NCBI GenBank assembly: GCA_053919585.1
Contig: CM132787.1
Source of the DNA: Euprymna scolopes
Lineage: Eukaryota
Length of the DNA: 64,000 nt
Strand: one strand, 5' to 3'
In this document: positions 461-10,058 of the stretch, piece after piece
How positions within the stretch are numbered: position 1 is the first letter of the stretch
Layout of the letters: the number at the start of each line of letters is the position of its first letter
The notes under the pieces: generated by a model
Told to the model about the DNA's origin: nothing
What the model saw: the letters and a program-made list of their open reading frames with translations, nothing else
Database searches by the model: none
Translations under genes and position numbers: made by a program

Positions 461-1388
461 AAAAGTAAAATAAGTGTCTGAATATTTTGCTAACCGCATT
501 TCATTTCCTCTGATGATATGAGCCATTATTGAAAATCCACGTATTAAGGAAATCAACATAACCCCTTCTATATATTCCTTTTGTCAAACAATAAATTCTT
601 AATTCGAATATATGTGTCTATATGTTGTTTTTTCAGAATTTAAATATAACCACTAAGCTTATATATTGCTCTATTCTTAAATATTGAGCGTCTCCTTTTT
701 GGCTAGGATCACCCTGAAAGTATTACTTCAAGTAATATCCATCAGGATTTGTCATCTGATTTCTAATCAGTGTCTTAACTCGATTATATATATATATAAC
801 ATGGCGAGCTGGATCCCACTACTTGGTACCGTAAACAATGGAATGAAAGTCTGTTCAGATACGTATTAACTTTTATATTTCTTTCAATGCGTCTGATGAA
901 ATGCCAATCTGGAAGATTTTTGAACAACATAAAGTTTAAAATTCTCCGAATGGTGTCGGAACAATTGTAACACTATTGAAAAATACAGAAAATGACGCAA
1001 ACGTTTTTTGTTTTGTTAATTTGATTTTTAAAATAAATATAAATGCTCGATTACAGAAATGATAATATTTGAGTCAATTTACTTGGCTTAATTTTTATTA
1101 GTAGATATACAGTGTATTTGGCTGATATATATTAATAATTGGAACAAAACTATTTAATAAATAAATAAATATATATATATATATATATAATGAAAAAAGG
1201 AAAAACAGAATTATTTATATATCCAACGTTTCGTCTTTTTTCACAATATTCCTGGGATCACTAATTTGATGAAATCCCAACCATGACGATATATATAATA
1301 TTTTTGAATTAATGTATTTGTACCTGCTGACACACGTTTCATATTTAAACAATCTACAGCATAGGAGATGATAATTAATAGTGATAAA

Positions 1389-3169: not shown

Positions 3170-4479
3170 GCTTATTATGCTATAGTATTCAGTAATTTAG
3201 ATTATATAAAATTAACTATATAAAACATACATAAACATTTACACAGAAATATCTTAATCCAATAAGAAATATAGTAATAAATGGCAATTAGTTTTTATTA
3301 TATAATGGATATGATTAAAAAGTATGTATAATGTTATTATATTTAGCATCCAAAGTATGTTTTATACAAAATTGGAAATAATTCCATGTAATAGTTTAGG
3401 AGGCTATAAGTATTTATGCTAATCATTATACGTGTTATGATTTAATGCCGTAGTGTGTTAACATAAGACTAAATATATTTATCATCTCTATATTAAATTT
3501 ATTGCAAGTCTGACTAATTTTTTCATGTTATAAAGGTTTACTAGTAATAATATTATTAGAGGTTGTTGCCATAGAATAATCATTAGCTGTAGTGGACAAT
3601 TTGTACTAGTCATATCATAAATCCGCTACGTATATGAAATGAAAGCTGTCTTGTGTATGAAAGCTGCTTTATGCAATTTAAAGGTGTTTTAATACTATCA
3701 ACAGCAGTATCAGTTTTAATGTTTTCTTCATATCTTAAACATACTTTATTCCAAACTTGATGTACTTTCGTGGAGACGTCGTCGTGGTACTTACAATTTG
3801 TCGATGAACAAACAAGTGATGTCTGTATACTCTTTATTTTGCTTGTTCTGTTACGTAATTCAGTACCATGCAAGTATGTTTTATGTACTAAAATTTAAAG
3901 TAACCGAAGTATGAAAACATTTGTCGCAATTCATTAAAAATTCCCAAAGTCATTGAAAGATAAAACATCGTTAAAATGCCACTGTATATGCATAAATATA
4001 AATTGTTGAAAAATGTTTAGTTTTGTGGATTTTAGTCATTCATGATTGAATACGAAATGTGATTAAAAGATTGAGACGTTGGTTAAACCTTACCAAACGT
4101 TTTGAAAAATAACTTTGCTACAGTATTTTTTTAATAATTAAAGAAAGGGTTAGAAATTCATTTTTCCTACTAAATGCATTTTATATACGTTCTTTATTAT
4201 TACTTAATAAGTTAACATCACTTTTTAAAAACATTGTTACTTTTTCATAGAGGACGGGTTAAAAATTATTTCTTTTAAGAAAAAGATCGTTCCATTCGTT
4301 TATCGGTTATGAGATAAAATGTGTACGTGTTTTACTTTATACCATTAGATCGATTAAACTGGCTGTTTTATAAATATCATATTATATTACAAAAGATTGC
4401 ATTTTTGGCAATCGCTCGAAACAAGGCATAAAGCCACTTGAAGTAAAGAGTATAAAAGAACGAAAGCTGATTATTGTGA

Positions 4480-7160
4480 TGACGGGAAATGCCTATTGCC
4501 TTTAGGCTTGTAAAGACGAAGTTGTAAATAAAAGGAAAGTAGTCGGCAGAAAGAGAGTTCCCCAACCTTGCAATTCTTGGAAAGAAGTTACTAAAATAGA
4601 AAGCTGTATTACAATGAGGTATTACAACAATAAATTACCAACAAGTAAAACGAGCTGGAACAAAGGTAGCAAGAAAATAAATCAGATATCTCTGAGGAAA
4701 GCATGCTATAGTAGTATTTGTAGAAAAGACTAGCAACATCACGTCTGTGAGAGGGGTTGTAAGCGAGAAGGAAAGGTGGGATCAATATAATTATAGATAC
4801 GGTTCTGCAATTTATCAAAAAACTTTAAAATGGGACACTTAATCAGTAGCCCAAATGTAACGACTGTACTGCATACGTGGTCTGATAATAGGTTTGTAAA
4901 GATAAGACAATAGCCTTCAGTGTGAGGTGTTAAGAGCGATATGGAACTGATTTTACGAGAATCAGAAATAGTAAGGGATTTAGTATATAGACTCCAAAAA
5001 AGATTTGATGAGAAAGAAAAACCAAGAAGACTCTGTTGTAGATTTCTAATCAAGAGTAACGCTATCCATAAGACTCTCGGGAAGAAAATGGACATGTCCA
5101 CGATTGAAGGACAATCGCTCTCTTAGCAGAATTTAACGAAACAGTTTTTTACCCCAATCGATACTTTTACCCTAATCAATATTTCTTTACCTCAATCAGT
5201 ATTTTTTACACCACTCAATATTTTTTTTATCGCAATTGATATTTTTTACCTCAAGGTATATTTTTAATCAAATTGATATTTTTTCCTCAATTGACGTTTT
5301 TACCTTAATCGATATTTCTTACCCTAATCGATATTTTTTACCTCAATCGATAGTTTTACCCCAGTCAATATTTTACCTCAATTGATATTTTTACCTCAAT
5401 CGATAGTTTTTACCCCAGTTGATATTATTCCCCAATCGATATTATTCCCAATCGATATTTTTATCCCAATTGATATTTTTACATCAATCGATATTTTTGG
5501 CCAAATCGACATTTTTTACGTAATTGATATTTTTTACCCCAGTCAATATTCTTTACCCCAATCGATATTTTTACCTCAATCGATATTTTTACCCCAGTCG
5601 ATATGTTTTACATCAATCGATATTTTACCCCAATCGATATTTTTTATCCTAATCGATATTTTTTATCCCAATCTTTATTTTACATCAATCGATATTTTTA
5701 CCCAATCAACATTTTTACATAATCGATATTTTTTACCCCAGTCAATATTCTTTACCCCAGTCGATATTTTTTACCCCAATCGATATTTTTACCCCAATCG
5801 ATATTTTTTACCTCAATCGATATTTTCCCTAATTGATATTTTTCCTCAAGTGATATTTTTACCTCAATCGATATTTTTACCCCAATCAATATTTTTTATC
5901 TTAATCGATATTTTTTATCCCAATTGATATTTTACCCCAATCGATATTTTTTACCTCAATCGATAACAGAACGCAAATCAACTTTTAGTGCAACTGTATA
6001 TTTTTACTGACATGAGAAAGATGTACAAGAAACTATACTACAATATAATGTGGGGTCATCAGCATTAATGATTTCCGAATTATATTTTCTGGAAAGTCAT
6101 TTATAAAGAGAACAAAGTTTTGGACCCAAAACAGAGGAACACCGACATTTATCGGAAAAGAAAGTTAAGATACTCCATAAAGAGTTTTTCGCAAACTCCG
6201 AAGGACTAACAGGAGAATATTTAGTTGGCTCAGATTAATCACCATCATTTTTAAGATATGGACGACAAAAACTCCTTCCAACAAGAGGCGACAAAGGAAT
6301 AAGATAAACAGAGATTGAATAATTTCGAAAGATTAGAACGAAGTTCAGACACGTAACGTTTGAGAAAAACAATAGAAATAAAATCAGGACTAAAAGACTT
6401 AGATTGGTCATGACCAGCAATACGTCTAGCGGCCATATTTGGAGTGATAATTCCATAATCAAAAGTCCGATCAGTTTTCAAAGTAAAATGCAGAAAAACG
6501 GCACCAAAATCATAAATGTAGTTTCAGCAAAAAGTCTGGCTTATCCTTAGAAGATGAATGACTTGGGGACCATTAAAAAGAGAAGCTAGTCTGTAACATT
6601 ATTAGCAGCACCGTTCGGAAACATACTAAATGTAGGACCTCATGGAACGTCATATAGGAAAATGCGAACCCCATCCAAATCCGCCCTCTTGTAGTTAAAA
6701 GTCTTCCTATAAAATTGACGATCAATTGAAGACTTAACAGAAAAATCAATCTAAGCATCAATAACAGCATGATTAGAAGGACTCAATGAAAGAGAAGCGG
6801 ATATAGAACATGTCACGATCAAAAGTTAGAAAGAGACCAAGTAAAGATGGTTGATAAAGGTCATTATCAGGAAACGTATGGAGAAGGTGAATATTTCAGA
6901 CAACTCATGACAGAAAAGTTAAGACAGATATCACCAGCAAGCTATGTGCGATTAGTGTGGGAAATTCAGTCAGAATGGTAAGCATTCAAGTCATCGGAGG
7001 AAAGATAGTGTTTGAAAGAATGAAGTTGTAATGCATAAATACAGGAACATACATGACTGTGTTGAGATGCAGTAGACTGAGAACTTTGCAAACGAGTGTA
7101 TTTCTAACATGCAGATAAATGGTACAGAGATAAGTCAGGGGCAATACTGGAAGACGATAC
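4480..7160 (-). mobile_element. Degenerate CR1/L2-group LINE ORF2 (APE endonuclease + reverse transcriptase), interrupted by a tandem array
   Basis: Motifs occur in the expected order on the minus strand. APE: LAGD (~6930), RFPDN..QPSLLGLFLT (~6850), PSNHA (SDH-like, ~6770). RT: KSFSPDFI..LKRYVSEL..LSKLFNLCL...CWK (6251-6410), GVP..VLGP (~6130), NADD (YADD position, ~6055), VSLNSAK (~5130), LQPLSHRRDVASLFYKYY (~4730), FFPR..NSL (~4570). Many stops, frameshifts and deletions. Confidence 0.85.
5145..5964. repeat. ~20-bp degenerate tandem array (TTTTACCCCAATCGATATTT), ~40 units, lying inside the LINE RT
   Basis: Recurring AATCGATA core with variable T-tracts. Flanked by AACAG at 5140-5144 and 5965-5969. 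Confidence 0.93.
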
Positions 7161-7162
7161 TT

Positions 7163-7165
<3 letters not shown>

Positions 7166-7216
<51 letters not shown>
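7166..7216. repeat. (TA)n microsatellite
   Basis: Pure TA tract of ~50 bp. Confidence 0.98.
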
Positions 7217-7217
<1 letters not shown>

Positions 7218-7363
7218 CTACTTAATTTACTCACATAAACGTAATATACGAAACTATAGATTTATGCGTAAACTTTAAGTATTTACTTCAAAAGTGCTCA
7301 ATACGTAGGTAGAGCTAGTTAGTAAGTTATAAAATGTATATGGCGATAAATGTATATGGCGCA

Positions 7364-7416
7364 TAAGCCTGAAGAATCCTAGAGTGGATGAAACGCGGAA
7401 TATTCAGTGTAGCTTA
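7364..7416 (+). ncRNA. Type I hammerhead ribozyme (complete catalytic core) within a 123-bp hairpin (7321-7443)
   Basis: Stem I TAAGC (7364-68)/GCTTA (7412-16). Core CTGAAGA (7369-75). Stem II ATCC/GGAT with loop TAGAGT. GAAA (7390-93). Stem III ACGC.GA/TC.GTGT around the palindrome GAATATTC. Cleavage triplet GUA (7409-11). Stem I is extended by a long inverted repeat. Confidence 0.8.
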
Positions 7417-7444
7417 ATCGCCATATACATTTTATAACTTACTC

Positions 7445-7445
<1 letters not shown>

Positions 7446-7515
<70 letters not shown>
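7446..7515. repeat. (TA)n microsatellite
   Basis: Pure TA tract of ~70 bp. Confidence 0.98.
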
Positions 7516-7519
<4 letters not shown>

Positions 7520-9121: not shown

Positions 9122-10058
9122 TTTTTAGTTATTATGCAATAAGCCAAATACTTGATTTATCCATATACGGATTCATTTTGCTTATCTGTGGGTTGGTTCT
9201 GACTAGATAATTCGCGCAAGCGTTCGAACGACTTTATTTTGCACTGATTTTCAATTCATGTTTTTCTTTGCTTGTGCTGATTTGCAACTGTTAATATCCT
9301 TCAAATACCTACTATATACGTCACGTGATTAAGTCCAATTTATCTTGTCATTAAACCCAATCTACTCTCACATCTGTAAGAACCACATACAAGAAGTAGG
9401 TATAAATGATTGGCTTGATCGTATGGCGCAGGAAAGACAAAGTTTGTTCATTTCCTGCCGTGCGTAATATAAAACCGTGATACATATAAGTATTAAAGCA
9501 ATGCTACTAAAAAGCAAAATAGATGCATTCATGTTATTCTTTGCTTATTTTTTTATTTCAAATTTCATGGATGAAATTTCTAAAACTGAAGATTGGATTG
9601 CTGATTTCTATTGTTTTCAGTGAGTTTTGTGTGGGGATTTTTACTCTGCTCATGCTATGATTGTATAACTAGTTAATGGAATGCATACAAAGCAAACTTT
9701 TAATTATTAAACTCTTACTTTTTCGTGTTCATTAGTTTTTATATGCAAATAGGTTTTGACCTTAACAAATTCAATTTCCTTAGTAAAATACCATTTTTGT
9801 TTAATTAGTTTATGCATTTCCAATGCGGCTTGGAAAGCTGGTAGTAAATTTGAGTGTCTATTTTGAATCCTAAATAAAACTCAATTCTATAAGCTGCAAT
9901 TTTATTGAAATAATTATATATCTACACGTATATGTGTTTCTTATTGGGTTAGCTCTTCTTATCTCTCTGCGGGGCGATTTCAAATTTTCCTTCGCCCAGA
10001 ATATTATTTTAAATAGCTCTTGTCTAGCGTCAAACTGAATGCATGATCGGCATAAAAA

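What the first reader, a model, noticed from the sequence alone, without database searches (positions are those of the whole stretch)
7321..7443. Complete type I hammerhead ribozyme in a small hairpin element between two (TA)n tracts
Seen: every conserved core element is present and correctly spaced. These are stem I (TAAGC/GCTTA), CUGAAGA, a 4-bp stem II (AUCC/GGAU, loop UAGAGU), GAAA, stem III (ACGC.GA/UC.GUGU) and a GUA cleavage triplet, with the predicted cut after 7411. Stem I continues after a small internal loop 5 bp from the core. The ~230-bp unit 7217-7445 has no ORF and is bounded by (TA)n on both sides. Established: Penelope-like elements and non-autonomous retrozymes carry hammerheads, usually minimal ones with a very short stem III, and natural fast hammerheads use a stem I loop/loop II contact at about this position. 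Inference: this may be a monomer-competent ribozyme from an undescribed (TA)n-targeting non-autonomous retroelement family.
Basis: partly seen in the sequence, partly recalled or inferred. Interest (0 to 1): 0.8.

Follow-up and report, generated by a model that had tools for sequence, protein, structure and literature searches.

The report
Penelope-like retroelement fragment with hammerhead
The hammerhead motif is real, but it sits in a dead, doubly truncated stub of a 2.9-kb Penelope-like jumping gene that targets (TA)n repeats, which is a known kind of element rather than a new one.

Summary
Window 7364-7416 carries every hammerhead (HHR) core position with helices I, II and III, and the predicted cut is at 7411|7412. 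A strict descriptor finds it once in the window and in none of 100 dinucleotide shuffles.

The 229-bp unit is not an undescribed non-autonomous family. It is two 5'-truncated 3' ends of a ~2.9-kb Penelope-like element (PLE) joined head to head. The minus-strand arm (7217-7347) keeps a 104-nt "tail". The plus-strand arm (7362-7443) holds the ribozyme.

Full-length copies elsewhere in this genome have the same termini and (TA)n flanks. Their ~700-aa RT plus C-terminal GIY-YIG ORF carries the RWK, DKT and CxCX5C marks of the Hydra clade (Craig et al. 2021). That clade is already known for (TA)n insertion and HHRs.

Across 84 copies, shared changes in the HHR fall only at N7, 10.1 (still paired), loop II and the helix III mismatch. 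PLE relatives at 40-47% protein identity carry HHRs with different but complementary helices.

Rfam misses this HHR and the relatives' HHRs too. One polyA RNA-seq run showed no ends at the cut site, so cleavage is untested.

The unusual trait is a 6-7-bp helix III, rare in animal PLEs. The scan had already noted PLE/HHR mini-elements elsewhere in this genome.

The parts
7165..7216 (.). (TA)n microsatellite, left half of the insertion target
   Evidence: The same flank occurs at nearly all of the 30 genomic copies.
7217..7320 (-). Antisense copy of the 104-nt PLE 'tail', the extension found at only one end of an insertion
   Evidence: It is the reverse complement of L043:6763-6866, which directly follows the element body in a tandem full-length copy. 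It also forms the left end of the full-length composite insertion.
7321..7347 (-). Antisense copy of the last 27 nt of the PLE body. This is the 5' arm of the 27-bp hairpin and marks the end of the inverted, 5'-truncated copy.
   Evidence: unit 66-203 matches window 7350-7213 on the minus strand at 92%. The length of this arm varies between copies from 27 to about 60 nt or more.
7348..7361 (+). Junction filler: a 14-nt direct duplicate of 7332-7345
   Evidence: Read directly. The junction region is the only poorly alignable part among the copies.
7362..7443 (+). Direct 5'-truncated copy of the PLE 3' end, without tail
   Evidence: unit 10-95 matches 7359-7443 at 93%. The right end ...ACTTACT is the same as in the full-length insertion.
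7364..7416 (+). Type I hammerhead motif. Helix I is 7364-7368/7412-7416, core 7369-7375, helix II 7376-7389, GAA 7390-7392, helix III 7393-7410 and A17 7411. The predicted cut is at 7411|7412.
   Evidence: Conservation pattern. The same motif is the MFE fold in the parent context.
7446..7516 (.). (TA)n microsatellite, right half of the insertion target

Best explanation
Window 7217-7443 is a dead-on-arrival or stub insertion of a Hydra-clade Penelope-like retroelement into a (TA)n microsatellite. It consists of two 5'-truncated copies of the element's 3' end joined head to head.

The plus-strand stub preserves the family's pLTR hammerhead ribozyme intact. In the full-length element this type I HHR lies about 380 nt downstream of the RT/GIY-YIG ORF and 32 nt before the body's 3' end, and it is present in both pseudo-LTRs.

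Shown here: the architecture, the parentage, the conservation pattern and covariation with relatives.

Inferred: in transcripts of the parent the HHR folds (helix II 4 bp plus a 6-7-nt loop, facing an internal loop 5 bp up helix I, with a stable 6-7-bp helix III) and cuts after GUA. This would leave a 5'-OH RNA beginning GCUUAAUCGCC, processing pLTR or tandem read-through transcripts as proposed for other PLEs.

The window copy has no promoter part and no ORF, and is most likely functionless. If it is read through on the plus strand it might still cleave, but the 27-bp hairpin and alternative pairings compete with the active fold.
For: Repeat family: at least 1439 first-look candidates. The 40 that were scored are 84-94% identical (apart from the window's own copy) and nearly all cover the full unit. 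Of the 30 read, nearly all have (TA)n flanks.

Parent element (L043): the HHR occurs at 6687 and 9599, 2912 bp apart. The body end is followed by the tail, which is the reverse complement of window 7217-7320. An inverted truncated copy lies upstream, and the outer termini are the same as in the 229-bp unit.

ORF: RMRW(K), ADKT, FD, YRDD, CxCX5C, Y..YIG..R..H..E..N and a flanking CxxC/CxH are invariant across 26 homologs. These match the Hydra-clade description. Atlas neighbours carry HTH_animal, DUF8422, GIY-YIG and RVT_1. Many genomic copies have open 715-787-aa frames at 96-98% identity.

HHR constraint: in 84 copies, variants shared by 3 or more copies occur only at N7, at 10.1 (A/G, both pair with U11.1), at two loop II columns and at the helix III mismatch. 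None occur in the 10 core columns, the 10 helix I columns or the 12 paired helix III columns. By my own hand calculation, the hypergeometric chance that at least 4 of 5 such columns fall in the 14 free columns out of 54 is about 0.013.

Relatives at 40-47% protein identity carry HHRs beside the ORF with unrelated but complementary helices and the same GUA triplet. One of them (L046) has a 6-bp helix III.

In the parent context the MFE and the centroid are both the exact HHR junction.
Against: No Rfam hammerhead hit was found. The same models also miss the relatives' HHRs, yet they find 73 canonical HHRs elsewhere in this genome.

There is no excess of RNA starts or ends at the predicted cut (L043 6730|6731) in one raw polyA RNA-seq run. 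Coverage of the shared part is equal on both strands, as expected from read-through of dispersed stubs.

The 5' ends of the truncated copies in my (biased) sample show no spike at the cut site.

The fold energy of the parent HHR is no better than that of shuffles (z -0.38). In the window copy the HHR fold is 4.3 kcal/mol above the MFE.

Pair 10.1-11.1 is A-U or G.U, not G-C.

Pfam and PDB profile searches do not recognise the ORF, so RT and EN identity rests on motifs and on neighbours' annotations.
Confidence: 0.8

Rival explanations
1. The 229-bp unit is a propagating, protein-less mini-element: a non-autonomous offshoot mobilised in trans by the PLE and copied as a unit from its own RNA. 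On this reading it is not an abortive double-truncated insertion. This is.
For: More than 1000 candidates were found. In the top 30 copies the direct arm starts within a few nt of the same place, and unit positions 6677-6682 are over-represented (15 arms). A 2026 preprint argues that animal retrozymes derive from PLE pLTRs.
Against: The sample was chosen by similarity to the query, which favours arms like the query's. Junctions and filler differ in almost every copy. Arm lengths form a continuum up to full length, with the same head-to-head architecture throughout. Short copies carry the HHR variants of several different long-copy subfamilies, which suggests repeated generation rather than one short lineage. 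The fixed boundary has another possible cause: it lies about 30 nt downstream of a TATA-like box and so may mark an RNA 5' end.
Confidence: 0.3
2. The hammerhead-like fold is kept mainly as a 3'-end recognition structure for the element's reverse transcriptase, and catalysis is weak or irrelevant.
For: The motif lies in the last ~85 nt, which is the only part retained by even the shortest insertions. No in vivo ends were seen at the cut site. PLE HHRs showed low self-cleavage in vitro in Cervera & de la Pena 2014.
Against: The positions held constant are exactly the catalytic core and the GUA triplet, in this family and in distant relatives whose helices differ completely. A protein-binding hairpin would not need them.
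Confidence: 0.1
3. The motif is a chance match inside an AT-rich repeat.
For: There is no covariance-model hit, and the fold energy is not significant in the parent context.
Against: The strict descriptor gives 0 hits in 100 shuffles. The motif is conserved in all subfamilies, with variation confined to free positions. Homologous elements in other organisms carry HHRs at the equivalent place.
Confidence: 0.03

Closest known systems
Hydra clade of Penelope-like elements (Craig et al. 2021, PMC8557442)
   Same: [quoted passage not shown] It has the RWK and DKT motifs, the CxCX5C linker and CxxC/CxH around the E and N residues. It inserts into (TA)n, carries HHRs, and shows pLTRs, inverted 5'-truncated copies and a one-sided tail.
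   Different: The tail is about 104 nt here, against the 30-40 nt quoted for PLEs in general. Placement in the clade rests on motifs, not on a tree. The host appears to be a mollusc-like animal with a 5.9-Gb genome. The specific family is, as far as I could check, not named.
Minimal and canonical type I hammerheads of metazoan PLEs (Cervera & de la Pena 2014, PMC4209133)
   Same: Type I topology and location in both flanking repeats. Helix II is 4 bp, and helix I has an unpaired region about 5-6 bp from the core. The centre of helix III is palindromic (GAAUAUUC).
   Different: Metazoan PLE HHRs usually have a 1-2-bp helix III and are thought to act as dimers. Here helix III has 6 pairs plus a mismatch, more like the monomer-active fungal and protist PLE HHRs. 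Pair 10.1-11.1 is A-U or G.U. Rfam Hammerhead_1 does not score it.
Non-LTR retrozymes of animals (Cervera & de la Pena 2020, PMC7229834; Li et al. 2026 preprint, 10.64898/2026.07.22.740005)
   Same: Short, non-coding, carries a type I HHR and is related to PLE pLTRs.
   Different: Retrozymes are tandem arrays whose unit is excised between two HHRs and circularised. These copies are solitary head-to-head stubs with one complete HHR, and no circular joints were seen.
Twin-priming inversions of 5'-truncated L1 insertions
   Same: An abortive retrotransposition product with an inverted 5' part joined to a direct 3' part at a variable junction.
   Different: Here both arms copy the same 3' terminal region, giving a palindrome, and one arm carries an extra tail. 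That is the PLE pattern, not the L1 pattern.

Membership tests
Hammerhead ribozyme, type I | Core C3 U4 G5 A6 N7 G8 A9, G12 A13 A14, A15.1-U16.1 and H17 in the right order and spacing | tested here: met
   CUGAAGA ... GAA ... A15.1/U16.1, with A17 at 7411.
Hammerhead ribozyme, type I | Three helices around the core, with helices II and III closed by loops and helix I open | tested here: met
   In the parent context both the MFE and the centroid are this junction. In the window copy it is a suboptimal fold.
Hammerhead ribozyme, type I | Helices supported by covariation, and core conserved among relatives | tested here: met
   Within the family, shared variants occur only at free or pair-preserving positions. 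Relatives L046, L048, L049, L050 and L083 have different complementary helices and the same core and GUA. Caveat: L046 has C at position 4.
Hammerhead ribozyme, type I | Site-specific self-cleavage | tested here: inconclusive
   One raw polyA RNA-seq run shows no pile-up of ends at the site, and copy 5' ends show no spike there.
Rfam Hammerhead_1 (RF00163) and other Rfam hammerhead models | Score at or above the gathering threshold | tested here: not met
   No hit even at E<=10. The models also miss the relatives' HHRs but find 73 others in this genome, so this is a limit of the model's reach.
Penelope-like element, Hydra clade | Single ORF with RT followed by a C-terminal GIY-YIG endonuclease | tested here: met
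   Met at motif level: FD, YRDD, then Y..YIG..R..H..E..N, invariant in 26 homologs. Neighbours are annotated RVT_1 and GIY-YIG. Local Pfam and PDB profile searches found nothing.
Penelope-like element, Hydra clade | RWK present, DKG changed to DKT, CxCX5C linker, CxxC/CxH instead of CCHH | tested here: met
   compared with the description.
Penelope-like element, Hydra clade | Short element (<3 kb) inserted in (TA)n, with pLTRs, an inverted truncated copy and a one-sided tail | tested here: met
   The spacing between the two HHRs is 2912 bp. Flanks and architecture. Figure legend quoted.
Penelope-like element, Hydra clade | Phylogenetic placement with reference Hydra RT/EN sequences | not tested
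   No reference Hydra sequences were available. The paper's supplements are not held.
Non-LTR retrozyme | Tandem units each carrying an HHR, with a unit-length circular RNA | tested here: not met
   Copies are solitary between microsatellites. The joints seen in reads reflect copy structure, not back-joins at the cut site.

The most novel reading that the evidence does not exclude
This young, probably active Hydra-clade PLE family may use a fast, monomer-active hammerhead (long helix III plus a loop II / helix I contact). The ribozyme would sit at the very 5' end of the pLTR transcript, just downstream of GC-, CCAAT- and TATA-like boxes. Self-cleavage would then remove the cap and the first ~50 nt from every transcript. 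The abundant 229-bp head-to-head units would be copies of pLTR-only RNAs mobilised by the same machinery.
Probability: 0.2. Interest if true: 0.5.

Novelty: new member of a known kind. Interest (0 to 1): 0.3.

Why it matters
The finding shows that a convincing 'stand-alone hairpin ribozyme element' can be no more than the stub of a PLE insertion. It also shows that Rfam's hammerhead models miss the HHRs of this whole PLE lineage, so counts of animal hammerheads based on those models are too low.

The family offers a useful test case. It is a metazoan PLE with intact ORFs and a hammerhead whose helix III should not need dimerisation. The still-unclear role of HHRs in PLE transposition could be examined there.

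Tried and rejected
- **Rfam scans.** cmscan at E<=10 on 1.1 kb and on 77 nt, and at the gathering threshold on the whole window and on 9 related loci, gave no hammerhead.
- **Protein profile searches.** A Pfam scan of the ORF and three homologs found no RT or GIY-YIG. A PDB profile search found nothing.
- **RNA evidence.** One read-laying run gave no starts or ends at the cut site and almost no coverage of the ORF part, so there is no support and the result is not decisive.
- **Cleavage record in copy 5' ends.** No spike appeared at the cut site in 143 arms.
- **Helitron or MITE readings** for an element with a 3' hairpin in TA repeats. I rejected these because the termini do not fit and an RT-encoding parent was found.
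- **The repeat finder on L043** was swamped by microsatellites.
- **Supplements of Craig et al.** with the Hydra HHR list are not held.
- **Four relatives' contigs** (L044/L045, L047, L081, L082, L084) showed no HHR. At least some of these contigs end before the expected place.

Full report
**1. The observation**

- Helix I is 7364-7368 paired with 7412-7416.
- The 5' core CUGAAGA is 7369-7375.
- Helix II is AUCC/GGAU with a 6-nt loop (7376-7389).
- GAA is 7390-7392.
- Helix III is 7393-7410: six pairs, one G.A mismatch and loop AUAU.
- A17 is 7411, so the cut would fall between 7411 and 7412.
- Perfect 27-bp arms lie at 7321-7347 and 7417-7443, and (TA)n lies on both sides.

A descriptor script of my own finds the motif once in both strands of the window under strict settings, and never in 100 dinucleotide-preserving shuffles. 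Relaxed settings give a mean of 0.03 hits per shuffle.

Rfam gives no hammerhead match, even at E<=10 on a 77-nt slice.

**2. What the 229-bp unit is**

The unit is a dispersed repeat. There are at least 1439 first-look candidates. The 40 that were scored are 84-94% identical (apart from the window's own copy) and nearly all cover the full unit. Of the 30 copies I read, nearly all sit between (TA)n tracts, and a few have (TC)n or similar on one side.

Aligning the 30 copies showed three things.
- The 3' ~80 nt holding the motif is well conserved.
- The 5' arm of the hairpin varies in length.
- In many copies that arm continues as an exact reverse complement of the 3' part.

Two loci held longer versions. 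Following their internal sequence led to a ~2.9-kb element in tandem arrangement, L043. There the same motif occurs at 6687 and again at 9599, 2912 bp apart.

In L043 the body end (...AAATTACT) is followed directly by about 104 nt that are the reverse complement of window 7217-7320. The whole composite insertion has the same outer termini and (TA)n-like flanks as the 229-bp unit, with an inverted truncated copy upstream.

The window unit therefore breaks down as follows.
- 7217-7347: a minus-strand copy of the last ~27 nt of the body plus the tail.
- 7348-7361: a 14-nt filler that duplicates 7332-7345.
- 7362-7443: a plus-strand copy of the last ~82 nt of the body.

This is the arrangement drawn for PLEs: pLTRs, an inverted 5'-truncated copy, and a tail at only one end (figure legend quoted). 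Here both arms are cut down to stubs. The hairpin is a by-product of that architecture.

**3. The parent element**

The ORF in L043 (7137-9221, with an upstream ATG at 6933 and one stop) shows several motifs:
- RMRW(K)
- ADKT
- FD and YRDD
- a CxCX5C linker
- a C-terminal Y..YIG..R..H..E..N pattern flanked by CxxC and CxH

These residues are invariant or nearly so in an alignment with 25 homologs of 41-50% identity.

The motifs match the marks Craig et al. give for the Hydra clade of PLEs. That clade is described as shorter than 3 kb, with RWK present, DKG changed to DKT, a CxCX5C linker, no CCHH, almost all families inserting in (TA)n, and HHRs readily found.

Local Pfam and PDB profile searches did not recognise the protein. 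Precomputed annotations and Atlas neighbours carry HTH_animal, DUF8422, GIY-YIG and RVT_1.

The genome holds many copies with open frames of 715-787 aa at 96-98% identity. The family is therefore young and probably still active.

I did not make a tree with reference Hydra elements, so clade placement rests on motifs.

**4. Is the hammerhead real?**

Three lines of evidence say yes.

(a) Conservation pattern. In 84 copies from long and short insertions, variants shared by three or more copies inside the 54-nt motif occur only at the following places:
- N7, where all four bases are seen
- 10.1, which is A or G, and both pair with U11.1
- two loop II columns
- the unpaired position inside helix III

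None occur in the ten core columns, the ten helix I columns or the twelve paired helix III columns. Rare private changes are spread over all classes, as expected for neutral decay after insertion. By my own hand calculation (hypergeometric), the chance that at least four of five shared-variant columns fall in the 14 free columns out of 54 is about 0.013.

(b) Relatives. Contigs encoding proteins 40-47% identical carry HHR motifs next to the ORF. Some carry them on both sides, as in pLTRs.
- Helices I and II are complementary but entirely different in sequence from ours.
- The cleavage triplet is the same GUA.
- L048, L049, L050 and L083 have the short palindromic helix III typical of PLEs.
- L046 has a 6-bp helix III like ours, but C at position 4.

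(c) Folding. In the parent context the minimum-energy and centroid folds are exactly the three-way junction. The energy is no better than that of shuffles.

Rfam also misses the relatives' HHRs, yet it finds 73 canonical HHRs elsewhere in this genome. The missing hit therefore reflects the reach of the model.

**5. What is not shown**

- Cleavage itself. One raw polyA RNA-seq run and three sets of RNA contigs were laid on L043:6515-7300.
  - The part shared with the stubs is covered equally on both strands.
  - The ORF part is almost uncovered.
  - No position shows an excess of starts or ends; the cut site would be 6730|6731.
  - This gives no support, but it is weak evidence against cleavage. 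Half the reads are antisense, many copies are mutated, and polyA libraries are poor at catching such ends.
- A cleavage record in copy ends. The 5' ends of 143 truncated arms show no spike at the cut site.
- Folding in the window copy. There the hammerhead fold is 4.3 kcal/mol above the MFE. Other stubs have longer inverted arms that would sequester helices II and III.

**6. Mechanism (inferred)**

In transcripts of the full-length element the HHR would cut after GUA and release RNA beginning GCUUAAUCGCC. This would process pLTR or tandem read-through transcripts, as proposed for PLEs.

The geometry resembles the canonical metazoan type I design described: helix II of 4 bp with a 6-7-nt loop, and an internal loop 5 bp up helix I. 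Helix III differs. It has 6-7 positions rather than 1-2 bp, which should allow action as a monomer. Its centre, GAAUAUUC, is also self-complementary, so dimers are not excluded.

GC-, CCAAT- and TATA-like boxes lie at L043 ~6598-6655. The direct arm of 15 arms (mostly from the short copies) starts at 6677-6682, about 30 nt downstream of the TATA-like box. This fits an RNA 5' end at the edge of the HHR, but my sample is biased toward arms like the query's.

**7. Stub or mini-element?**

I favour abortive, doubly truncated insertions, for three reasons.
- Junctions differ in almost every copy.
- Arm lengths form a continuum up to full length.
- Short copies carry the HHR variants of several long-copy subfamilies.

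A propagating protein-less offshoot is not excluded, at about 0.3.

**8. Verdict**

This is a new member of a known kind: a Hydra-type PLE family and its hammerhead. The modest twist is a long helix III that standard models do not detect. The scan had already noted PLE/HHR mini-elements on other DNA of this genome.

Noticed in passing
window 503-553 (+): A second hammerhead-like motif: CUGAUGA, a 7-bp helix I, a poor helix II and a 3-bp helix III. It lies inside another young dispersed repeat with at least 1378 first-look candidates; the scored copies are 96-98% identical. Rfam gives no hit. It may be chance within a repeat or another HHR-bearing family.
   Followed up: partly
G000:C8:10432194-10435515 and G000:C3:89840417-89842627: Arrays of canonical Rfam Hammerhead_1 hits spaced about 410 bp apart, with the layout expected of non-LTR retrozymes. 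In all, 73 hits in the genome score over the cut-off.
   Followed up: no
L043:6598-6655: GC-box-like (GGGGCGG), CCAAT-like (ATTGGCCAA) and TATA-like (TATATAAAAA) motifs lie just upstream of the hammerhead. The TATA-like box is about 30 nt before the point where the direct arm of 15 arms (mostly from the short copies) begins (6677-6682). The 35-nt stretch 6596-6630 is shared with reads of another expressed repeat (loose ends).
   Followed up: partly
L043:6515-6649: In the raw RNA-seq run the 3' UTR part of the element shows a 4-6-fold strand bias (first mate on the minus strand). If the library is a standard stranded one, that means sense transcripts. The ORF start is almost uncovered, and the stub-shared part is covered equally on both strands.
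   Followed up: no
L046:10-49 and 4281-4320: A related PLE from a marine metagenome has C instead of U at core position 4 (CCGAAGA) in both pLTR hammerheads, together with a 6-bp helix III. Its tail region shares the short word TTGAGCACTTT with this family's tail.
   Followed up: no
L050:25-1536: Five tRNA genes lie upstream of a related PLE copy in another organism's contig. Four are on one strand at a 382-bp period and one is on the opposite strand.
   Followed up: no
L043:8600-8700 and L043:6418-6455 / 9320-9370: The PLE ORF contains a run of about 20 Asn codons between RT and EN. The 3' UTR carries its own internal (TA)n microsatellite and an A-run.
   Followed up: no
L004, L005, L020, L027: Some copies have (TA)n on the tail side but (TC)n or (TCTG)n on the other side. 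Insertion sites therefore include junctions of compound microsatellites.
   Followed up: no
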